Virus record (IMG/VR): IMGVR_UViG_3300035703_000006
Span: 183,113-247,112 of that record
DNA: 64,000 bases
Reading direction: 5' to 3' (one strand)
Both the position numbers and the translations under genes were made by a program. This document shows positions 3 through 61,780 of this stretch, piece by piece (the first letter of the stretch is position 1; every line of letters begins with the position of its first letter). The notes under the pieces are model-generated. The model was not told the origin of the DNA, made no database searches, and saw nothing but the letters and a program-made list of their open reading frames with translations.

Positions 3-3000
3 GGAATTGGTTCTACTGGAATTCGTAAAACTTTAACTTATGATTATATAAATGATTCATTAAAATCGAGTGAAAATGTTAATATTGCTATAGGAAAAAC
101 TTATAAAATTGATGGAACTGATGTACTAAGTTCTACGACTCTTGGTGCTGGTGTAACTATTTCAAATATAAGAAGTGTAAATCCAGGATTAATTTTTGAT
201 AGAACTACATATTCACCAACTTCAGATGATTATTTGTTAATTTATGATAATGCCGATAATCAACTGAAAAAAGCAACAATTCAAAATGCTGCTTTACAGG
301 GTATTCAAGGTACTCAAGGTCTTCAAGGAACTCAAGGAACACAGGGTACTCAAGGTTTACAAGGTCTTCAGGGAACACAGGGCACTCAAGGAACTCAGGG
401 AACTCAAGGTACTCAGGGAACTCAAGGTACACAAGGAACTCAAGGTTTACAAGGACTTCAAGGAACTCAAGGTACACAAGGAACTCAAGGTTTACAAGGA
501 CTTCAAGGAACTCAAGGTACACAAGGAACTCAAGGTACTCAAGGTACACAAGGAACTCAAGGTACTCAAGGTACTCAAGGTACTCAAGGTACTCAAGGAA
601 CTCAAGGTACACAAGGAACTCAAGGTACTCAAGGTACACAAGGAACTCAAGGTACTCAAGGTACTCAAGGTACTCAAGGTACTCAAGGAACTCAAGGTTT
701 ACAAGGTCTTCAGGGAACTCAAGGTCTTCAGGGAACTCAAGGTCTTCAGGGAACTCAAGGTACACAAGGAACTCAAGGTACACAAGGAACTCAAGGTCTT
801 CAAGGTCTTCAAGGACTTCAAGGCACTCAAGGAACACAGGGTACTCAAGGAACACAGGGTACTCAAGGTACTCAAGGACTTCAAGGTACTCAAGGTACAC
901 AGGGAACTCAAGGAACTCAAGGTACACAGGGAACTCAAGGAACTCAAGGTACACAGGGAACTCAAGGTACACAGGGAACTCAAGGTACACAGGGAACTCA
1001 AGGAACTCAAGGAACTCAAGGTCTTCAAGGAACTCAAGGAACACAGGGTACTCAAGGTTTACAAGGTCTTCAGGGAACACAGGGCACTCAAGGAACTCAG
1101 GGAACTCAAGGTACTCAGGGAACTCAAGGTACACAAGGAACTCAAGGTTTACAAGGACTTCAAGGAACTCAAGGTACACAAGGAACTCAAGGTTTACAAG
1201 GACTTCAAGGAACTCAAGGTACACAGGGCACTCAAGGTACACAGGGCACTCAAGGTACACAGGGCACTCAAGGTACTCAAGGTACTCAAGGTACTCAAGG
1301 CACTCAAGGTACTCAAGGTACTCAAGGTACTCAAGGTACTCAAGGCACTCAAGGTACTCAAGGCACTCAAGGACTTCAAGGAACTCAAGGACTTCAAGGA
1401 ACTCAAGGAACACAGGGAACTCAAGGTCTCCAAGGCACACAGGGCACACAGGGAACTCAAGGTCTCCAAGGTACTCAAGGAACTCAAGGAACTCAAGGTC
1501 TCCAGGGTACTCAAGGTACACAGGGAACTCAAGGAACTCAAGGTCTCCAGGGTACTCAGGGAACTCAAGGTACACAAGGAACTCAAGGTTTACAAGGACT
1601 TCAAGGAACTCAAGGAACACAGGGTACTCAAGGTACTCAAGGTACTCAAGGAACACAGGGCACACAGGGAACTCAAGGTCCCCAAGGTACTCAAGGAACT
1701 CAAGGAACTCAAGGAACTCAAGGTCTTCAGGGAACTCAAGGAACTCAAGGAACTCAAGGAACTCAAGGTACACAAGGAACACAGGGTACTCAAGGAACAC
1801 AGGGTACTCAAGGTACTCAAGGTACTCAAGGAACACAGGGCACACAGGGAACTCAAGGTCTCCAAGGTACTCAAGGAACTCAAGGTCTTCAGGGAACTCA
1901 AGGAACTCAAGGAACTCAAGGTACACAAGGAACTCAAGGTATCACTGGGCCAGTAGCAGGTTCTGCAAATCAAATTATTTTCAAAGACATCTCCAATAAT
2001 CCAACTGGTTCTGGTAATTTAACTTTTGATGGATCTAATCTTTATGTCGGTGGAAATGTAACGATTGGTGGTACTAGTGTTCTTATTGCTGCCAATACTT
2101 TAACTGTAAAAGATAAAGATATTATTGTTGGACTTGCAACAACTGCTGGTGGAGTTGTAATTTCCAATGACACAACAGCAAATCATGGTGGTATTGCTGT
2201 TGCTTCTACCGAAGGAAATCCACTAATTGATATTAATGCTGGTGTTGGTACTGATGATATTCCATCCACATATAAGCAACTTATGTGGATTAAGGCAGGC
2301 ACTTTTACTGGTTTGAATACTGATGCGTGGATATCAAACTATGCAGTTGGTGTTGGTACTTTTGATCTTTCCAATGGAGTAAGATTTGCCGCAGGTGGAA
2401 TGAGAGTCAGTGATGACATTACAACTATCAATGCACTTGATGTAAATAAATTGTCTCCAAATGGCACTGATTTTGGTGCTGCATCTTATGTTCCAATTGC
2501 AGATGGTGCAGGAAATTGGAGTTGGGGAACAGTAAGTGCTGCTGGTGCGGCAACAACAAACGCAATTAATATTAGAGATGAAAATACCCCACAAGGAAGT
2601 GCAACAACACTAAACTTTACTGGAGATGGTATAAGTGCATCGGTTGCATCTGGAACTGCGACTATAACTGTTAATACTATTCAAGGTCTTCAGGGAACTC
2701 AAGGTACTCAAGGATTTCAAGGAACTCAAGGAACTCAAGGAACTCAAGGAACTACAGGTACTCAAGGAACTACAGGTACTCAAGGTACTCAAGGACTTCA
2801 AGGAACTCAAGGAACTACAGGTACTCAGGGAACTACAGGAACTCAAGGAACTACAGGAACTCAAGGAACTACAGGAACTCAGGGAACCACAGGTACTCAA
2901 GGAACCACAGGTACTCAAGGAACTACAGGTACTCAGGGAACTACAGGAACTCAAGGAACTACAGGTACTCAAGGTACTCAAGGACTTCAAGGAACTCAAG

Positions 3001-5015
3001 GAACTACAGGAACTCAAGGAACTACAGGAACTCAAGGAACCACAGGTACTCAGGGAACTACAGGTACTCAGGGAACTACAGGTACTCAGGGAACTACAGG
3101 AACTCAAGGAACTACAGGTACTCAAGGAACTACAGGTACTCAGGGAACTACAGGAACTCAAGGTTTACAGGGTTTACAAGGAAGACAGGGAACTCAAGGA
3201 ACTACAGGTACTCAAGGAACCACAGGTACTCAAGGAACCACAGGTACTCAAGGAACTACAGGTACTCAGGGAACTACAGGAACTACAGGTTTACAGGGTT
3301 TACAAGGAACTACAGGTACTCAGGGAACTACAGGAACTCAAGGAACTACAGGAACTCAAGGAACTACAGGAACTCAGGGAACCACAGGTACTCAAGGAAC
3401 TACAGGAACTCAGGGAACCACAGGTACTCAAGGAACTACAGGTACTCAAGGAACTCAAGGTTTACAGGGTTTACAAGGAAGACAGGGAACTCAAGGAACT
3501 ACAGGTACTCAGGGAACTACAGGAACTCAAGGAACTACAGGAACTCAAGGAACTACAGGAACTCAGGGAACCACAGGTACTCAAGGAACCACAGGTACTC
3601 AAGGAACTACAGGTACTCAGGGAACTACAGGAACTCAGGGAACCACAGGTACTCAAGGAACTACAGGAACTCAAGGTTTACAGGGTTTACAAGGAACTAC
3701 AGGAACTACAGGTACTCAAGGAACTACAGGTACTCAGGGAACTACAGGTACTCAGGGAACTACAGGTACTCAGGGAACTACAGGTACTCAAGGAACTACA
3801 GGAACTCAGGGAACTACAGGAACTCAAGGAACTACAGGTACTCAAGGTTTACAGGGTTTACAAGGAACTACAGGAACTACAGGTACTCAAGGAACTACAG
3901 GTACTCAGGGAACTACAGGTACTCAAGGAACTACAGGAACTCAGGGAACTACAGGAACTCAAGGAACTACAGGTACTCAAGGAACTACAGGTACTCAAGG
4001 AACTACAGGTACTCAGGGAACTACAGGTACTCAGGGAACTACAGGTACTCAGGGAACTACAGGTACTCAAGGAACTACAGGTACTCAAGGAACTCAAGGT
4101 TTACAGGGTTTACAAGGAAGACAGGGAACTCAAGGAACTACAGGTACTCAAGGAACTACAGGTACTCAAGGAACTACAGGTACTCAAGGAACTACAGGTA
4201 CTCAGGGAACTACAGGAACTCAAGGAACTACAGGAACTCAAGGAACTACAGGAACTCAGGGAACCACAGGTACTCAAGGAACTACAGGTACTCAAGGAAC
4301 TACAGGAACTACAGGTTTACAGGGTTTACAAGGAACTACAGGAACTACAGGTACTCAAGGAACTACAGGTACTCAGGGAACTACAGGTACTCAAGGAACT
4401 ACAGGAACTCAGGGAACTACAGGAACTCAAGGAACTACAGGTACTCAAGGAACTACAGGTACTCAGGGAACTACAGGAACTCAGGGAACCACAGGAACTC
4501 AGGGAACCACAGGAACAGGTACTCAGGGACTTCAGGGACTCCAAGGTCCTGCTGCCGCAGGAGGAGGTGGTGGTGGATCTTTAACGGTTATTGATGACAC
4601 AACTACAAATGCTACTTGGTATGTTGGAGTTCTTTCTGTTACGGCAGGAACTGCTTCAACCATTCATACTTCATCTACAAAACTCAACTTCAATCCAAGC
4701 ACTGGAACGTTATCAGCAACAGTCTTTACATCTCTTTCTGACCAAACACAGAAAACAAATGTAAGAAAGATTGAAAATGCTTTAGAAATAGTTAAAAAAA
4801 TTGAAGGTGTAAAATATGAATGGATCGACAATCACAACCAACCCTCAATCGGTGTAATTGCTCAGGAAATTGAAAAAGTACTTCCTGAAGTAGTGACAAC
4901 AAATGATAAGGGACTGAAGACAGTTTCTTATGGAAATATTGTTGGTTTGTTAATTGAAGCAATTAAAGAACAACAAGTTCAAATTGAAAAACTGGAGAAG
5001 AAAATAAATGCCTAA
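3..5015 (+). CDS. Collagen-like tail fibre/appendage protein with C-terminal intramolecular chaperone (peptidase S74-like); 5' end lies outside the window
   Basis: Frame is open from base 3 (GIGSTGIRKTL...), so the listed 234 start is internal. Two long Gly-X-Y tracts flank a phage fibre domain (VKDKDIIVG...GGIAV). C-terminus SLSD..KTNV..IENAL..V..IEGVKYEW..IGVIAQEIEKVLPEVV..VSYGNIVGLLIEAIKEQQ matches the S74 chaperone pattern. Confidence 0.88.
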   Translation, partial: GIGSTGIRKTLTYDYINDSLKSSENVNIAIGKTYKIDGTDVLSSTTLGAGVTISNIRSVNPGLIFDRTTYSPTSDDYLLIYDNADNQLKKATIQNAALQGIQGTQGLQGTQGTQGTQGLQGLQGTQGTQGTQGTQGTQGTQGTQGTQGLQGLQGTQGTQGTQGLQGLQGTQGTQGTQGTQGTQGTQGTQGTQGTQGTQGTQGTQGTQGTQGTQGTQGTQGTQGTQGTQGTQGLQGLQGTQGLQGTQGLQGTQGTQGTQGTQGTQGLQGLQGLQGTQGTQGTQGTQGTQGTQGLQGTQGTQGTQGTQGTQGTQGTQGTQGTQGTQGTQGTQGTQGTQGTQGLQGTQGTQGTQGLQGLQGTQGTQGTQGTQGTQGTQGTQGTQGLQGLQGTQGTQGTQGLQGLQGTQGTQGTQGTQGTQGTQGTQGTQGTQGTQGTQGTQGTQGTQGTQGTQGTQGTQGLQGTQGLQGTQGTQGTQGLQGTQGTQGTQGLQGTQGTQGTQGLQGTQGTQGTQGTQGLQGTQGTQGTQGTQGLQGLQGTQGTQGTQGTQGTQGTQGTQGTQGPQGTQGTQGTQGTQGLQGTQGTQGTQGTQGTQGTQGTQGTQGTQGTQGTQGTQGTQGTQGLQGTQGTQGLQGTQGTQGTQGTQGTQGITGPVAGSANQIIFKDISNNPTGSGNLTFDGSNLYVGGNVTIGGTSVLIAANTLTVKDKDIIVGLATTAGGVVISNDTTANHGGIAVASTEGNPLIDINAGVGTDDIPSTYKQLMWIKAGTFTGLNTDAWISNYAVGVGTFDLSNGVRFAAGGMRVSDDITTINALDVNKLSPNGTDFGAASYVPIADGAGNWSWGTVSAAGAATTNAINIRDENTPQGSATTLNFTGDGISASVASGTATITVNTIQGLQGTQGTQGFQGTQGTQGTQGTTGTQGTTGTQGTQGLQGTQGTTGTQGTTGTQGTTGTQGTTGTQGTTGTQGTTGTQGTTGTQGTTGTQGTTGTQGTQGLQGTQGTTGTQGTTGTQGTTGTQGTTGTQGTTGTQGTTGTQGTTGTQGTTGTQGTTGTQGLQGLQGRQGTQGTTGTQGTTGTQGTTGTQGTTGTQGTTGTTGLQGLQGTTGTQGTTGTQGTTGTQGTTGTQGTTGTQGTTGTQGTTGTQGTTGTQGTQGLQGLQGRQGTQGTTGTQGTTGTQGTTGTQGTTGTQGTTGTQGTTGTQGTTGTQGTTGTQGTTGTQGTTGTQGLQGLQGTTGTTGTQGTTGTQGTTGTQGTTGTQGTTGTQGTTGTQGTTGTQGTTGTQGLQGLQGTTGTTGTQGTTGTQGTTGTQGTTGTQGTTGTQGTTGTQGTTGTQGTTGTQGTTGTQGTTGTQGTTGTQGTTGTQGTQGLQGLQGRQGTQGTTGTQGTTGTQGTTGTQGTTGTQGTTGTQGTTGTQGTTGTQGTTGTQGTTGTQGTTGTTGLQGLQGTTGTTGTQGTTGTQGTTGTQGTTGTQGTTGTQGTTGTQGTTGTQGTTGTQGTTGTQGTTGTGTQGLQGLQGPAAAGGGGGGSLTVIDDTTTNATWYVGVLSVTAGTASTIHTSSTKLNFNPSTGTLSATVFTSLSDQTQKTNVRKIENALEIVKKIEGVKYEWIDNHNQPSIGVIAQEIEKVLPEVVTTNDKGLKTVSYGNIVGLLIEAIKEQQVQIEKLEKKINA
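300..1950 (+). repeat. 9-bp periodic tandem repeat encoding (GTQ/GLQ)n
   Basis: ggWactcaa / ggtcttcaa / ggtacacag units directly visible. Confidence 0.97.
2685..4550 (+). repeat. 18-bp periodic tandem repeat encoding (GTTGTQ)n with GLQ/GRQ punctuation
   Basis: ggaactacaggtactcaa units directly visible. Confidence 0.97.
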
Positions 5016-41656: not shown

Positions 41657-41747
41657 GAGAGAGTGTCTACTGTCGGCAATATGTGTAGTCCGTGTCTGTA
41701 AAACACGTACATAAGAACCATCGGGGGTTCGATTCCCTCCTCTCTCA
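41657..41747 (+). tRNA. tRNA-Tyr(GTA), enlarged D-arm
   Basis: GAGAGAG/CTCTCTC; CGTGT-CTGTAAA-ACACG. Confidence 0.85.
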
Positions 41748-41751
41748 CCTT

Positions 41752-42982: not shown

Positions 42983-43011
42983 TTGACAATTTATACTACA
43001 TATAGTATGAT
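42983..43011 (+). promoter_or_regulatory. Internal sigma70 promoter
   Basis: TTGACA-N17-TATGAT. Confidence 0.75.
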
Positions 43012-43196: not shown

Positions 43197-43234
43197 CTTG
43201 ACAAATCCGAAAGGGTATGTCATAATAAACAAAT

Positions 43235-43384: not shown

Positions 43385-43458
43385 CGGAATGTAGCTCAGT
43401 TTGGTAGAGCACTCGCTTTGGGAGCGAGATGTCGCAGGTTCGAATCCTGTCATTCCGA
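43385..43458 (+). tRNA. tRNA-Pro(TGG)
   Basis: CGGAATG/CATTCCG; CTCGC-TTTGGGA-GCGAG. Confidence 0.95.
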
Positions 43459-43499
43459 CTTGGAGGTAATAAATATCTCCATTAATTGCAAAATACATT

Positions 43500-43655
43500 A
43501 TGTCTCTTATTTCACAAAAAGACCGAGAAAATGTTATTGAGTCTCTTGACTTCTACCTTTTTAGTAAAGGACAAGATTTCACAGAGGAAAAAAGAGCAGA
43601 ATTCAATGCTCTTCTCAATTGGATTAAACTTGAGTATTCAAAGAATGAAAATTAA
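43500..43655 (+). CDS. 51-aa hypothetical protein within the tRNA array
   Basis: MSLISQKDRENVIESLDFY..FNALLNWIKLE; overlaps the next start. Confidence 0.6.
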   Translation: MSLISQKDRENVIESLDFYLFSKGQDFTEEKRAEFNALLNWIKLEYSKNEN

Positions 43656-43818
43656 TCTTTGGCATTGTAAAGATATGGGTCAATGGAGATGGTCATTAAC
43701 TGACGACTCTAGACCAATTATTAAACAAGAAACTGGTCAAAGACCTAATTTACGTGATGCGATGAATGATATCGCAAATAATGTTGAACATATGATGGGT
43801 TATAGTGGGGAAGTGTAA
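43645..43818 (+). CDS. Hypothetical protein; 3' end overlaps the initiator-type tRNA
   Basis: MKINLWHCKDMGQWRWSLTD..LRDAMNDIAN. Confidence 0.65.
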   Translation: MKINLWHCKDMGQWRWSLTDDSRPIIKQETGQRPNLRDAMNDIANNVEHMMGYSGEV

Positions 43819-43878
43819 CGGTTGCACAGAAGTCTCATAAGCTTCAGGTAGGAGGTTCAATTCCTCCCCCCGCCACCA
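43804..43878 (+). tRNA. tRNA-Met(CAT), initiator-like
   Basis: A1-C72 mismatch, CCA encoded; lacks the three consecutive G-C anticodon-stem pairs. Confidence 0.82.
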
Positions 43879-43881
43879 AAT

Positions 43882-43955
43882 GCCGTGGGTAGTCTAGTGG
43901 TCAGGACAGGCAGACAATGCACTTGGAGTTTGGGTTCGATTCCCAATCTGCGGCA
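43882..43955 (+). ncRNA. tRNA-like RNA or pseudo-tRNA with aberrant anticodon arm
   Basis: GCCGTGGG/TCTGCGGC stem, normal D-arm, TTGGG-TTCGATT-CCCAA T-arm; no 7-nt anticodon loop. Confidence 0.7.
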
Positions 43956-43984
43956 CACACAACATACACACAAGGAGTAAACAA

Positions 43985-44188
43985 ATGACACCTTACGAAC
44001 TACGATTTGAAATTTTTAAGCAAGCATATAATTTTGCTAATGATAAGTTCAGTATCGAATATGATACTGCCCGTTGCTGGAATGAAAATTCTAGAAATAC
44101 GGTGAAAATAGATTACCCAGATTTTCCGACTTATGAGCAGGTAGAGTACCTTGCAGAAAAGATTAATACTTTTGTAAGTTCTAAGTAA
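43985..44188 (+). CDS. Conserved phage hypothetical protein
   Basis: MTPYELRFEIFKQA..YP.FPT...V..LA..IN.FVS; AAGGAG RBS. Confidence 0.75.
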   Translation: MTPYELRFEIFKQAYNFANDKFSIEYDTARCWNENSRNTVKIDYPDFPTYEQVEYLAEKINTFVSSK

Positions 44189-44219
44189 AATAGTGGGGTG
44201 GCAACACCCCCGTTAGTAT

Positions 44220-44292
44220 TCCCATCGACCGAGCAAGCGAACGGGCCCGACTGTTAATCGGAGATTGGTAGGGGCAGTACCTACGATGGGAG
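44220..44292 (+). tRNA. tRNA-Asn(GTT) with GGCAGTA T-loop
   Basis: TCCCATC/GATGGGA, G73; CCGA-CTGTTAA-TCGG; GTAGG-GGCAGTA-CCTAC. Confidence 0.82.
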
Positions 44293-44465
44293 TTAGAAGG
44301 GTTGGAAATGTCCGATTCTTCTAAATTTAATAAGGTCTGGAAAGTAAAAGGAGAATGGGAACCGAAAGGAGATACCTCACCTGCCTTATTATCTTATTCA
44401 CTGCCCTCTAATGCAGTGAAAATTGCAGAAAGTGTCTTCTGCGGGTGACGGGCACTCGTTACCCA
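44293..44465 (+). ncRNA. Multi-hairpin pseudoknotted RNA (manA-motif-like candidate)
   Basis: Five stems; loops AGTGTC and GGCACT are complementary. Confidence 0.65.
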
Positions 44466-44468
44466 TTT

Positions 44469-44549
44469 GCTCAAGTGGCGGAATGGTATACGCAGCAGAC
44501 TTAGAATCTGCCGTCGCAAGACTTGGAGGTTCAAGTCCTCTCTTGAGCA
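44469..44549 (+). tRNA. tRNA-Leu(TAG)
   Basis: GCTCAAG/CTTGAGC; GCAGA-CTTAGAA-TCTGC. Confidence 0.94.
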
Positions 44550-44575
44550 TTGAAAACTAAATAGTTTTCTTATAA

Positions 44576-44648
44576 GGGGGCATAGCTCAATTGGTAGAGC
44601 ACTTGATTTGCATTCAAGAGGTTTCGAGTTCGAGACTCGATGCTTCCA
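44576..44648 (+). tRNA. tRNA-Ala(TGC)
   Basis: GGGGGCA/TGCTTCC with G3-U70. Confidence 0.94.
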
Positions 44649-44698
44649 TTATGGAGAGTAGGGGAATATTATAAATAACTATAGTTGTGGAGAGCACT

Positions 44699-45235
44699 AT
44701 GGTTACTTGTAAGTGTCAAAAATGTGGATTACAGTTTGAAAAGATTAAAAGTGAATATAATAGAAAAATTAAATTGGGAACTCCATTTTTTTGTAGTTTG
44801 AAATGTTCTAGTAGTTTTGATACTTCACATTTGGATAACTGGAGAAAAAGTGAGGAAAACAAAAAGTTTATAAAGCAGTTTAGTGGAAGTAGTAAAGATG
44901 AATATTCTCCTTTCAGAGAGACATTAAAAAAAGTCAAAAATAGAAGTAAATCTAAAAATAGAGAATGTGATATTGATTTGCAATATTTAAAAGAGGTTTG
45001 GGAAAATCAAAAGGGCAAATGTCCATATTTGAAAAGAAAATTAGTTCTTCCCCTAACTGACCAATCTCACGACAAATCAAACCCAAATCTAATTGCTAGT
45101 TTGGATAGAATTGATAGCTCTAAAGGATACGTAAAGGGAAACATACAATTTATCAGCACGACCTTAAATTTTGCTAAAAATAAATATTCTGAAAATGTTC
45201 TCTTGAATTTAATTGAAATGTGTGCTACTATATAA
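44699..45235 (+). CDS. HNH-like endonuclease
   Basis: N-terminal CxxC..FCS..C; QKGKCPY..ASLDRIDSSKGYVKGNIQFIS...N; TATAAATA at 44670. Confidence 0.8.
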   Translation: MVTCKCQKCGLQFEKIKSEYNRKIKLGTPFFCSLKCSSSFDTSHLDNWRKSEENKKFIKQFSGSSKDEYSPFRETLKKVKNRSKSKNRECDIDLQYLKEVWENQKGKCPYLKRKLVLPLTDQSHDKSNPNLIASLDRIDSSKGYVKGNIQFISTTLNFAKNKYSENVLLNLIEMCATI

Positions 45236-45237
45236 AG

Positions 45238-45457
45238 TGTTCAAGAGGATAAACCTCTATATTCCAACACATCGGGGCAGTACCGATTACCTCCATTACA
45301 GGGGGGTAAAACAGAATCGACTGGGGTGTATGTATTATCTGTTGACGGGACAAAAAACAAACGCAAACAACATTGTTGCATTCACTCGTCAGACCGCATT
45401 GGTTTGACCATAAAAGAGTGAGGGGGTTATAAGTTTCCTTCTTACCCAAAACTTATG
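45238..45457 (+). ncRNA. ssrA: tmRNA, circularly permuted two-piece type; tag ANNIVAFTRQTALV
   Basis: T-arm plus 3' acceptor strand TACCTCC-A (45271-45295) precede the 5' strand GGGGGTA (45302); G3-U70; AATCGAC D-loop; P2 TGGGGTGTA/TATATTCCA; tag 45363-45407; 3' pseudoknot; TTGAAT-N17-TACTAT promoter. Ends approximate. Confidence 0.88.
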
Positions 45458-45461
45458 CTGG

Positions 45462-45518
45462 GGACACTTGAAAAGGTGTCCCCTTTTTCGTCCAAGGTGG
45501 TTTTGAAGGTGCTATAAT
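45462..45518 (+). promoter_or_regulatory. Palindrome + -10 early promoter
   Basis: GGACACTT-N4-AGGTGTCC, TGCTATAAT. Confidence 0.7.
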
Positions 45519-45541
45519 TGCAAGGTAATTCACAAGACAAG

Positions 45542-45952
45542 ATGGCAACCCGTTCTCGTATTGGAATCCAACTCTCAGATGAATCTGTTCTTTCGGTGTA
45601 TCACAATTGGGATGGTTATCCTGAATGGTTGGGTCGTATTCTGAAAACTCACTACAATACTCGGGAGAAAGTTGCCGAGTTGATTGATGGTGGTGATATG
45701 AGTTCTTGCTGGACGGAAGACCGTTGGAACAGTGAGACCAAAGCACAAGAATACGGTCCTCAATACTACTCTCAACGGGGTGAGGATTGTCCTCCACGAC
45801 TTGATGAAAATAAGTATGAGTATCTTGCTAATGGTGAGGAATACGCATATCTTTATACTCTAAATGATGAGTGGGTGTGCTATGATACGCATGACTTCGG
45901 GAACAAATATCCCGAAATTGTTGAAATTCCGTCTGCTGCTCTTCACGTTTGA
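45542..45952 (+). CDS. Conserved phage hypothetical protein
   Basis: MATRSRIG..SVYHNWDGYP..LG..LIDGGDMS..EEYAYLY. Confidence 0.75.
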   Translation: MATRSRIGIQLSDESVLSVYHNWDGYPEWLGRILKTHYNTREKVAELIDGGDMSSCWTEDRWNSETKAQEYGPQYYSQRGEDCPPRLDENKYEYLANGEEYAYLYTLNDEWVCYDTHDFGNKYPEIVEIPSAALHV

Positions 45953-60951: not shown

Positions 60952-61780
60952 GTATTCATCAAGTCAAGGGAGGTTTCAAGATGATTGACACTTGTGTTCT
61001 TCACGATGATTACGAGGACTTTGCTGAAAAGTATCTCGGTATTGATTATGATGACTATGTGACTTTTGAACTTGGTCTTCCTGATGAAGATGAACTTGAA
61101 ATTGAATATCCTGTAGGTATTTGATTTCAAAAGGAATGGGTTTGCCTCAAAGTTACCCACTTTTACTCACTTGACTTTTTATTAAATGTCTGCTAAACTG
61201 ATTGCTCTTGCTGCTGAAATTGTTGATATCAACCCTGCTGGTGCTCAACTGATTGTCAATCTGACTAAGGCAGAAACTGGTGCTGAGATTGTAGAAGCAC
61301 TGGATAATTATGATTCTGTAGTTCTTGAGTATCATACTGAATCTGTTGAAACTGAGGGTGAAGTAACTCTCACCGATGCAGATGGTGTTGTAACTTCTGT
61401 TTGATTTTTACTCTTTAATTTCATAACCAACTAATTTTATTATGGCACGTCGTTCTAAATCTGCATCTCGTCAAATGGTTGAATCTCTCAAAGACCAACT
61501 CACAGAGTATTTCCGTGAAAATGTTTTTGATGATTATGACTATGAAGATTTGACGGGTTCCGAACTCTTTGAAGCACTTATTGAAACATTCAAAGAACTT
61601 GAGAATGAACTCAAAGAAGAACTGAAACCAATTCAGTATGTGCTAAATAAACTTGACCCAGAGGATACTGAACCTCAAGTTCTCAACGGGTGATTCTTAT
61701 GGGCATCAAAGGTCCAAACTTTGAGTAAGTCCCACCCCCTCCATGCCTCTTTACAATGCACAAACAGGAGGGTCTCTTAT

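What the first reader, a model, noticed from the sequence alone, without database searches (positions are those of the whole stretch)
44293..44465. Complex kissing-loop RNA between tRNA-Asn and tRNA-Leu
Seen: a 14-bp hairpin (44293-44324); AATAAGG/CCTTATT enclosing a purine-rich region with CC-GAAA-GG; TTCACTGC/GCAGTGAA; then two adjacent hairpins whose loops AGTGTC and GGCACT pair over 6 nt. Known: the manA motif is an orphan structured RNA of cyanophages often next to tRNAs. Here no protein gene follows, only tRNAs. Inference: it is excised as a trans-acting RNA rather than acting as a riboswitch.
Basis: partly seen in the sequence, partly recalled or inferred. Interest (0 to 1): 0.6.

Follow-up and report, generated by a model that had tools for sequence, protein, structure and literature searches.

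The report
Modular hairpin RNA in cyanophage tRNA array
The 176 bases between two tRNA genes of this T4-like cyanophage encode a real, conserved, non-coding RNA made of interchangeable hairpin modules; it matches no catalogued RNA family and its function is unknown, but it is probably cut out of the tRNA transcript.

Summary
Four are supported by compensatory base changes in 50-60 distinct relatives. The element is not manA and matches no Rfam 15 family.

It is one arrangement of a mosaic. I counted 34 architectures, built from about eleven hairpin modules in a nearly fixed order, in 230 viral contigs. The same modules occur in the isolates S-SRM01 (freshwater) and S-PM2 (marine). Three pattern scans of 185,579 cellular genomes found no copy.

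The first hairpin starts 0-2 nt after the tRNA-Asn discriminator in 144 of 169 loci. In 11 loci it starts 6-7 nt after a near-consensus sigma-70 promoter. The last hairpin usually ends 3-5 nt before the next tRNA. These boundaries suggest a discrete RNA released by tRNA-processing enzymes, but this was not tested.

Loop sequences are conserved on covarying stems, so the loops look like the working parts.

The 6-nt complementarity between the last two loops is real and conserved (chance about 0.02). It has no compensatory covariation. A zero-nucleotide linker makes pairing within one molecule sterically unlikely, so pairing between molecules fits better.

Function is unknown. My best guess is a stable trans-acting decoy or scaffold RNA, analogous to T4 RNAC/RNAD.

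The parts
44220..44292 (+). Non-canonical tRNA-Asn(GUU), the upstream boundary. Its discriminator G at 44292 is the last base before the element. The T-loop is GGCAGUA and the D-loop lacks GG.
   Evidence: Not called by ARAGORN or Rfam. Acceptor, anticodon and T stems covary across 12 loci and in Microcystis phage Mwe-JY26. Relatives have a canonical tRNA-Asn(GTT) at this position.
44293..44324 (+). Module HP-A: a 14-bp hairpin with loop AAUG and conserved apical motif UGGAAAUGUCYG. It forms the 5' end of the element.
   Evidence: In 52 distinct sequences, 7 of 14 pairs change on both sides. G8.U25 is kept in 49 of 52 and U11.G22 is invariant. It starts 0-2 nt after tRNA-Asn in 144 of 169 loci and 6-7 nt after a TTGACA-N17-TAATAT promoter in 11.
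44328..44391 (+). Module E, the central domain. Outer stem 44328-44336 with 44383-44391. A 12-nt purine-rich strand on the 5' side only (44337-44348). Inner helix AGG-A-GA with UC-A-CCU. Variable apical hairpin, here CC-GAAA-GG at 44362-44369.
   Evidence: RNAalifold on 15 distinct sequences gives 4 covarying pairs, including A-U to C-G at 44354/44377. The apical hairpin varies from 8 to about 40 nt. The module occurs alone between tRNA-Asp and tRNA-Glu in L142. It is not thermodynamically unusual.
44397..44420 (+). Module HP1: an 8-bp hairpin with the conserved 8-nt loop CCUCUAAU (44405-44412).
   Evidence: The stem covaries (CACTGC/GCAGTG, CACCGC/GCGGTG, CACTGT/ACAGTG, CGCCGT/ACGGCG) while the loop stays CCUCUAAY. 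In marine S-PM2 the same loop sits on a wholly different stem, GGGGAGU/ACUCCCC.
44425..44442 (+). Module HP2: a 6-bp hairpin with loop AGUGUC (44431-44436).
   Evidence: Three of 6 pairs change on both sides. The loop is invariant in 54 of 55 distinct sequences. In these data it is always found together with HP3.
44443..44464 (+). Module HP3: an 8-bp hairpin with loop GGCACU (44451-44456), complementary to the HP2 loop. It follows HP2 with no linker.
   Evidence: Five of 8 pairs change on both sides. The loop varies at one main position (G, A, U or C opposite the U of HP2) and once C to U. Loop-loop duplex energy is about -6 to -8 kcal/mol.
44465..44468 (+). Single-stranded AUUU tail, the short 5' leader of the next tRNA. 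The presumed RNase P cut lies before G44469.
   Evidence: tRNA-Leu(TAG) is 44469-44549 by Rfam and 44468-44550 by ARAGORN. In most relatives HP3 ends 3-5 nt before whichever tRNA follows: Thr, Val, Leu, Ala or Met. In a minority another module or a longer gap intervenes.

Best explanation
The region encodes a non-coding RNA of about 176 nt that is part of the phage's tRNA transcript.

It is a string of independently folding hairpin modules: HP-A, domain E, HP1, HP2 and HP3. These come from a repertoire of about eleven modules. T4-like cyanophages carry them in a nearly fixed order but in many combinations inside their tRNA arrays.

The proposed processing is as follows. The RNA is released by the enzymes that mature the flanking tRNAs. 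RNase Z or a similar enzyme cuts after the tRNA-Asn discriminator (G|UU). RNase P cuts 4 nt after HP3. In some relatives the same 5' end is made by transcription initiation instead.

The released RNA has a hairpin at each end. This should protect it from end-dependent nucleases.

The conserved loops, held on stems that are free to covary, are the working parts. HP-A and HP1 would present fixed loop sequences to a protein or RNA partner. The mutually complementary HP2 and HP3 loops would pair, most likely between two copies of the RNA.

The most likely role is a stable trans-acting decoy, sponge or scaffold made during infection.

Shown here: the structure, its conservation, its modularity, its boundaries relative to tRNAs and promoters, and its absence from the cellular genomes scanned.
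Inferred: processing, stability, partners and role.
For: - Structure.
- Strand specificity and conserved G.U pairs.
- Loops conserved while stems change, including HP1 in S-PM2 on a wholly different stem.
- The same 5' end is reached in two ways. It follows the tRNA-Asn 3' end in 144 of 169 loci, or in 11 a promoter whose -10 hexamer ends 6-7 nt upstream.
- The 3' end usually lies 3-5 nt before varied downstream tRNAs.
- No conserved ORF is possible, because element lengths differ by non-multiples of three: 71, 106, 126, 152, 175 and others.
- Absent from cellular genomes. The HP2/HP3 pattern gave 0 hits in 185,579 species genomes. The HP-A pattern gave only coding-sequence or chance matches.
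- Precedents. T4 makes two small RNAs of unknown role from its tRNA region (PMC3014915). In S-CREM1 the manA RNA exactly fills a tRNA-tRNA spacer.
- This window also carries an orphan abiF-motif RNA 6 nt before tRNA-Arg, with no AbiF gene nearby. That motif neutralises AbiF toxin as an RNA antitoxin (bioRxiv 10.1101/2025.04.15.648962).
Against: - There are no expression or processing data for any member.
- No partner has been identified.
- No single module is universal, so there is no obvious indispensable core.
- The E domain is no more stable than shuffled sequence.
- The loop-loop pairing has no compensatory change.
- Conserved loops could also serve a cis-acting role, for example binding RNA polymerase or a processing enzyme.
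Confidence: 0.5

Rival explanations
1. It is a cis-acting spacer of the tRNA operon. The hairpins would insulate neighbouring tRNAs from misfolding, block 5'- or 3'-end-dependent nucleases on processing intermediates, guide RNase Z, E or P, or modify the transcribing polymerase as put or nut elements do. After processing, the excised piece would be waste.
For: HP-A sits at the very 5' end of whatever RNA is left after tRNA-Asn is cut off, or at the start of the primary transcript. HP3 usually lies 3-5 nt before the next tRNA. The element occurs only inside tRNA arrays. Modules can be lost without loss of the array.
Against: Generic insulation or nuclease blocking does not need invariant loop sequences, conserved G.U pairs, or the same 8-nt loop kept on unrelated stems. 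Most other tRNA junctions in the same array have spacers of only 0-50 nt with no such element.
Confidence: 0.25
2. It is one compact RNA with an intramolecular HP2-HP3 kissing loop, acting as a ligand sensor or ribozyme.
For: The loops are complementary over 6 nt, 98.8% of cells are paired across 55 distinct sequences, and HP2 and HP3 always occur together. The chance of such a match is about 0.02.
Against: No position changes on both sides. All four bases occur at one loop position, and one variant breaks a central pair. Both 6-nt loops would be fully consumed and the stems are joined without a linker. A coaxial kissing complex would put the stem bases about 20 bp apart (inference). The other modules come and go, so there is no common tertiary core. 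There is no downstream gene or terminator to regulate. No known ribozyme or riboswitch model matches.
Confidence: 0.07
3. The modules are selfish or neutral palindromic DNA. They would be recombination scars or mobile cassettes, like the promoter-stem-loop cassettes of other T4-type phages, which accumulate in tRNA arrays without an RNA function.
For: The content is mosaic, with 34 architectures. Homing-endonuclease-like genes lie next to some arrays. In one contig the HP1 loop is inverted between its stem arms, which is a DNA-level event. The module D loop is a DNA palindrome, TGATCA or TGGCCA.
Against: Pairing is strand-specific, with conserved G.U pairs that would be A.C on the other strand. 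Module order is nearly fixed rather than random. Loop sequences are conserved from freshwater to marine phages. There is only one copy per locus and none outside tRNA arrays in about 0.74 Mb searched.
Confidence: 0.08
4. It is a divergent member of the manA family.
For: The context is the same. In S-CREM1 manA lies between tRNA-Leu and tRNA-Asn and begins with a terminal hairpin.
Against: The manA model gives no hit at E<=10. None of manA's conserved strings or its 5'/3' pseudoknot (alignment) is present.
Confidence: 0.01

Closest known systems
Phage T4 RNAC and RNAD (stable 'species 1 and 2' RNAs of the tRNA region)
   Same: They are small non-coding RNAs encoded inside the tRNA cluster of a T4-type phage and co-transcribed with the tRNAs. 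Their function is unknown (PMC3014915).
   Different: I did not test sequence or structure similarity, because the T4 sequences were not fetched. The cyanophage RNA is a mosaic of optional modules. Its excision and stability have not been shown.
manA RNA (Rfam RF01745) of cyanophages
   Same: It is an orphan structured RNA of T4-like cyanophages. In S-CREM1 it fills a tRNA-tRNA spacer exactly and starts with a terminal hairpin.
   Different: It is a different fold. manA is a pseudoknotted multi-stem domain with its own conserved strings, and the model does not match here.
ROOL and GOLLD RNAs
   Same: They are phage-encoded, often lie next to tRNA islands, are ornate, have unknown function, and have variable domains. 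Loop-loop pairings first read as tertiary contacts turned out to be bridges between molecules (PMC12286853).
   Different: They are 3-5 times larger and have a conserved core with long-range pairings. There is no Rfam match here. Multimerisation of the present RNA is only a hypothesis.
Dimerisation or oligomerisation loops: retroviral DIS and phi29 pRNA (from general knowledge)
   Same: They are hairpin loops with 4-6 nt of self- or cross-complementarity that pair between molecules. The sister module D carries a 6-nt palindromic loop, UGAUCA or UGGCCA. HP2 and HP3 carry a complementary pair.
   Different: There is no experimental evidence and no compensatory covariation for HP2/HP3. T4-type phages do not use a packaging RNA.
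abiF-motif RNA (RF03085), a type III-like RNA antitoxin
   Same: It is a short hairpin RNA placed a few nt before a tRNA in the same phage arrays. It shows that these arrays carry protein-binding decoy-type RNAs. Its loop, CUCUUUACAAU flanked by UGC/GCA, loosely resembles the HP1 loop.
   Different: The abiF model does not score HP1. The resemblance is short and of low complexity.

Membership tests
manA RNA (RF01745) | A match to the Rfam covariance model, which combines sequence, multi-stem structure and the 5'/3' pseudoknot | tested here: not met
   No manA hit at E<=10 in window 43400-45600 or 44293-44467. Positive control: 96.6 bits in S-CREM1.
Any Rfam 15 family, including ROOL, GOLLD, ribozymes, riboswitches, YrlA and 6S | A covariance-model match at or near the gathering score | tested here: not met
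   The best hits in the element are on the wrong strand or far below threshold: cow-rumen-4 at 18.5 against 48.5 bits, and Dictyoglomi-1 at 9.4 against 150. The larger relatives also give none.
Small RNAs processed out of phage tRNA clusters (T4 RNAC/RNAD type) | Encoded within a tRNA cluster on the same strand, with no ORF | tested here: met
Small RNAs processed out of phage tRNA clusters (T4 RNAC/RNAD type) | Accumulates as a discrete stable RNA with ends made by tRNA-processing enzymes | not testable with these tools
   Only indirect evidence: the boundaries lie at the discriminator and 3-5 nt before the next tRNA, and some loci have an alternative promoter start.
Kissing-loop pair | Two hairpin loops with Watson-Crick complementarity beyond chance | tested here: met
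   Six contiguous pairs. Chance 0.023. 98.8% of cells paired in 55 distinct sequences.
Kissing-loop pair | Compensatory changes that preserve the loop-loop pairs | tested here: inconclusive
   None of the 6 pairs changes on both sides. Three never vary, two vary on one side, and one only breaks. No divergent-loop copies were found in 0.74 Mb.
Riboswitch or cis-regulatory leader | Lies upstream of a regulated gene and has an expression platform (a terminator or a sequestered ribosome-binding site) | tested here: not met
   A tRNA follows 4 nt later. No terminator-like site lies on the + strand within or after the element. The downstream tRNA differs between relatives.

The most novel reading that the evidence does not exclude
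The RNA is a self-assembling unit. Once released from the tRNA transcript, copies join through reciprocal HP2-loop/HP3-loop pairing. Relatives with module D would also join through its palindromic UGAUCA or UGGCCA loop. The result would be dimers or larger RNA-only assemblies, a small modular cousin of the ROOL and GOLLD nanocages. The other loops (HP-A, HP1, the E purine strand) would be displayed to capture host factors.
Probability: 0.15. Interest if true: 0.8.

Novelty: new variant of a known kind. Interest (0 to 1): 0.6.

Why it matters
Phage tRNA arrays are usually read as codon-usage aids. This window, and about 240 related contigs, show that in T4-like cyanophages the arrays also carry a rich, conserved set of non-tRNA structured RNAs:
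- the modular family described here
- an orphan antitoxin-type abiF RNA
- a permuted tmRNA
- tRNA look-alikes.

If the modular RNA is released and acts in trans, then tRNA-processing enzymes are being used as a general production line for small phage effector RNAs. Each conserved loop would then be a handle for finding a host or phage partner.

The family is small and modular, and it is present in at least two isolates whose hosts are named in the records (S-SRM01 and S-PM2). It is therefore a far more tractable model than ROOL or GOLLD for asking what tRNA-island RNAs do. It also offers a test of whether loop-loop pairing between RNA molecules is a recurring design in them.

Tried and rejected
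- **manA and all other Rfam families:** no match.
- **Protein coding:** the 48-aa TTG ORF at 44302-44448 cannot be conserved, because relatives differ by insertions and deletions that are not multiples of three.
- **Terminator or attenuator:** there is no + strand terminator-like site in or after the element.
- **Host origin or prophage:** the HP2/HP3 pattern gave 0 hits in cellular genomes. Of the 26 hits to the HP-A pattern, 20 share one context that reads as the peptide FDVGLEMSGSP and varies mainly at third codon positions, so they look like coding sequence. The other six look like chance. They include a 23-nt identity in an Ignavibacteria MAG that has no tRNA context.
- **More divergent copies to test loop-loop covariation:** a covariance-model search of 0.74 Mb found one copy per locus and no altered loops.
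- **HP1 as an abiF motif:** the resemblance is loose and the model does not hit.
- **HP1 loop AAY as an Asn codon pairing with the adjacent tRNA-Asn anticodon (T-box-like):** by my estimate an 8-nt loop contains AAY by chance about one time in five. In S-PM2 the module follows tRNA-Thr. Dropped.
- **Ideas from memory that I could not test, so I make no claim:**
  - HP1 as a CRISPR-repeat mimic (its 5' half recalls type I-F repeats)
  - GGA-rich loops as CsrA-type sites
  - HP-A as a Ro/Y-RNA-like helix
  - HP1 and its linker as a boxA or nut-like antitermination signal
  - the E domain 3' strand as a mimic of the 16S rRNA 3' end.
- **Neighbouring proteins:** they give no clue. They are HNH endonucleases, a Dam-type methylase and unknowns.
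- **Published candidate RNAs:** the supplement of the 10,006 candidate viral RNAs paper is not held as text, so I could not check overlap with that list. The S-SRM01 genome paper lists the flanking tRNAs and leaves the 208-nt gap unannotated.

Full report
**What the window is.** The window comes from a T4-like cyanophage (Kyanoviridae). The nearest isolate is the freshwater Synechococcus phage S-SRM01, but DNA similarity is only patchy. ARAGORN finds 27 tRNA genes, most of them in one + strand array at 41.5-44.7 kb. Rfam adds a permuted, cyanobacterial-type tmRNA at 45222-45481 and an abiF-motif RNA at 61737-61773.

**The observation.**
- HP-A: 44293-44324
- central domain E: 44328-44391, closed by AATAAGG/CCTTATT and capped by CC-GAAA-GG
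- HP1: 44397-44420, loop CCUCUAAU
- HP2: 44425-44442, loop AGUGUC
- HP3: 44443-44464, loop GGCACU

The stretch folds far better than shuffled sequence (z = -4.9).

tRNA-Leu(TAG) starts at 44469. The upstream 'tRNA-Asn' (44220-44292) is real but unusual. ARAGORN and Rfam both miss it, because its T-loop is GGCAGUA and its D-loop lacks the GG. Its stems nevertheless covary across a dozen contigs and in a Microcystis phage. Relatives have a normal tRNA-Asn(GTT) at this position.

**Relatives.**
- S-SRM01 has the same element between tRNA-Asn and tRNA-Thr. The central domain differs there, and the region is unannotated.
- Four exact-pattern scans of IMG/VR were keyed on HP1, on the HP2/HP3 loops, on HP-A, and on modules C/D. 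Together they returned about 240 contigs.
- The modules also occur in the marine phage S-PM2, there after tRNA-Thr.
- The HP2/HP3 pattern was absent from 185,579 cellular genomes.
- The HP-A pattern gave only matches that look like coding sequence or chance.

**Anatomy of the family.** The spacer is a mosaic. I distinguish about eleven modules:

| Module | Description |
|---|---|
| A | HP-A, the first hairpin |
| B | a hairpin |
| C and D | two hairpins that occur together |
| E | the central domain found in this window |
| F | the central domain found in S-SRM01 |
| G | a five-hairpin domain containing a canonical T-arm |
| X | an extra hairpin |
| HP1 | hairpin with loop CCUCUAAY |
| HP2+HP3 | always found together |
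| H | a domain of about 110 nt |

They occur in 34 combinations in 230 loci, and the order is nearly fixed. The window's arrangement, A-E-HP1-HP2/3, is seen in 15 loci. No module is universal. E also occurs alone between tRNA-Asp and tRNA-Glu in L142.

**Evidence that it is RNA structure.**
- HP-A: 7 of 14 pairs change on both sides. Two G.U pairs are essentially invariant.
- HP1, HP2, HP3: 2, 3 and 5 pairs change on both sides, with 98% of cells paired against 33-50% in slid registers.
- E: 4 covarying pairs, around a conserved purine-rich strand and a variable apical hairpin.
- A covariance model scores 101 bits on the + strand and at most 26 on the - strand.
- Loops are far more conserved than stems. 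HP1 keeps CCUCUAAY on four stem variants in freshwater contigs and on an unrelated stem in S-PM2.
- The HP-A apical motif UGGAAAUGUCYG also appears grafted onto other stems.

**Boundaries.** Of 169 loci with enough upstream sequence:
- In 144, HP-A starts 0-2 nt after the discriminator of a tRNA-Asn(GTT) called by ARAGORN.
- In 11, it starts 6-7 nt after the -10 hexamer of a TTGAC(A/T)-N17-TAATAT promoter.
- Most of the rest follow non-canonical or truncated tRNA-Asn genes.

At the other end, HP3 usually stops 3-5 nt before whichever tRNA comes next: Thr, Val, Leu, Ala or Met. Two different routes to the same 5' end, and a 3' end set by the RNase P site, are what one expects of a discrete RNA product. 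Processing itself is inferred, not shown.

**The 'kissing loops'.**
- *For:* the complementarity is real. There are six contiguous pairs, with a chance of 0.023 for any loop pair in the element. It is kept in 98.8% of cells. HP2 and HP3 are never found apart.
- *Against:* no position shows a change on both sides. One loop position takes all four bases, and one variant breaks a central pair. No copies with different loops were found.
- *Geometry (my inference):* both loops are only 6 nt and would be fully paired, and the two stems are joined without a linker. In a coaxial kissing complex the stem bases would lie about 20 bp apart, so pairing within one molecule is sterically doubtful. Reciprocal pairing between two molecules would form two antiparallel 20-bp rods and fits well.
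- *Related modules:* the sister module D has a 6-nt palindromic loop. UGAUCA is found in most, and UGAUCG, UGGCCA or GGCC in others. The AU-to-GC switch keeps the loop self-complementary. A palindromic loop can only pair between molecules, or else it is a DNA-level palindrome.

**What it is not.**
- Not manA. No hit at E<=10, while the same search finds manA at 96.6 bits in S-CREM1.
- Not any other Rfam family.
- Not coding.
- Not a terminator or a riboswitch leader.

**Most likely mechanism.** I favour a stable, excised, trans-acting RNA whose conserved loops bind partners (confidence 0.5). Three precedents support this:
- T4 makes RNAC and RNAD from its tRNA region, and their role is still unknown.
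- In S-CREM1, manA exactly fills a tRNA-tRNA spacer. There tRNA-Asn is followed by a short UUGG...CCAA hairpin, then an abiF RNA, then a tRNA.
- This window has an orphan abiF-motif RNA 6 nt before tRNA-Arg(UCU), with no AbiF gene nearby. That motif neutralises AbiF toxin by direct binding.

These arrays therefore already appear to deliver at least one decoy-type RNA through tRNA processing.

The main rival is a purely cis-acting role in processing, stability or transcription (0.25). It does not easily explain the invariant loops. Selfish DNA (0.08) and a single compact kissing fold (0.07) are less likely.

**Novelty and interest.** The kind of thing is known: an orphan structured RNA in a phage tRNA island. 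This family is not in Rfam 15, and the papers I could search do not describe it. It differs from known examples in being a short, colinear mosaic of optional hairpins with loop-loop complementarity. I rate it a new variant of a known kind, with interest 0.6.

Noticed in passing
window 44220-44292; also L005, L047, L059, L085, L116, L135, L169, L181, L188; L002 about 1497-1570: A conserved family of non-canonical tRNA-Asn(GUU). The cloverleaf stems covary, but the T-loop is GGCAGUA (AGCGUUA in one contig) and the D-loop is AGCAAGCGAA without GG. ARAGORN and Rfam do not detect it. It is also present in Microcystis phage Mwe-JY26.
   Followed up: partly
window 45274-45284 compared with 44271-44281: The phage's permuted tmRNA has the same unusual T-arm string, GGGGCAGTACC, as the non-canonical tRNA-Asn. 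Two unrelated tRNA-like domains therefore share an altered 'elbow'.
   Followed up: no
window 41657-41750: A tRNA-Tyr(GUA)-like gene between tRNA-Lys and tRNA-Gly. It has acceptor GAGAGAG/CTCTCTC, a canonical T-arm, anticodon loop CTGTAAA and an odd D-arm. ARAGORN and Rfam miss it. Asn and Tyr are two amino acids absent from the 27 called tRNAs.
   Followed up: partly
window 43883-43954; S-PM2 L272 about 1606-1676; many IMG/VR loci: A conserved tRNA-like RNA. Rfam tRNA scores it only 33 bits and ARAGORN does not call it. It has normal acceptor, D and T arms, but a shortened anticodon arm ending in a GACAA loop. It may be a tRNA mimic without an anticodon.
   Followed up: no
window 61737-61773; L001 2599-2635; L011, L099, L112, L126, L135; S-CREM1 L217 1532-1568: An orphan abiF-motif RNA (RF03085) sits a few nt 5' of a tRNA. 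In the window and in S-SRM01 that tRNA is tRNA-Arg(TCT). No Abi_2/AbiF gene was found among the five nearest ORFs in the window. It may be a phage pseudo-antitoxin.
   Followed up: partly
module D in about 120 loci, e.g. L072 about 3225-3245, L154, L184; S-PM2 L272 1547-1565: The hairpin loop carries a 6-nt palindrome. UGAUCA is found in most, and UGAUCG, UGGCCA or GGCC in others. The AU-to-GC change keeps the loop self-complementary. This is either a dimerisation loop or a DNA palindrome.
   Followed up: partly
L055 about 1500-1590: The 8-nt HP1 loop is inverted (ATTAGAGG instead of CCTCTAAT) between the intact stem arms. This is a small hairpin-mediated inversion at the DNA level.
   Followed up: no
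L001 2716-2798; L142 about 2461-2554 (- strand); L185: Another conserved leader, GATAGAGGKTAAGTCACTGTTATAYCCTTATGAG...ACTTAMTCCATCA, follows a sigma-70-like promoter. It lies directly upstream of different tRNAs: Asn, Leu and Ala.
   Followed up: no
window 42983-43011 and 43198-43226: Two near-consensus sigma-70 promoters (TTGACA-17-TATGAT and TTGACA-17-CATAAT) lie inside the tRNA array. The array therefore appears to be transcribed in several units.
   Followed up: no
L111 7677-7774, L126 156-256, L135 6230-6327, L136 4785-4882: wcaG RNAs (RF01761) lie within a few kb of the tRNA arrays in related contigs. None was found in this window.
   Followed up: no
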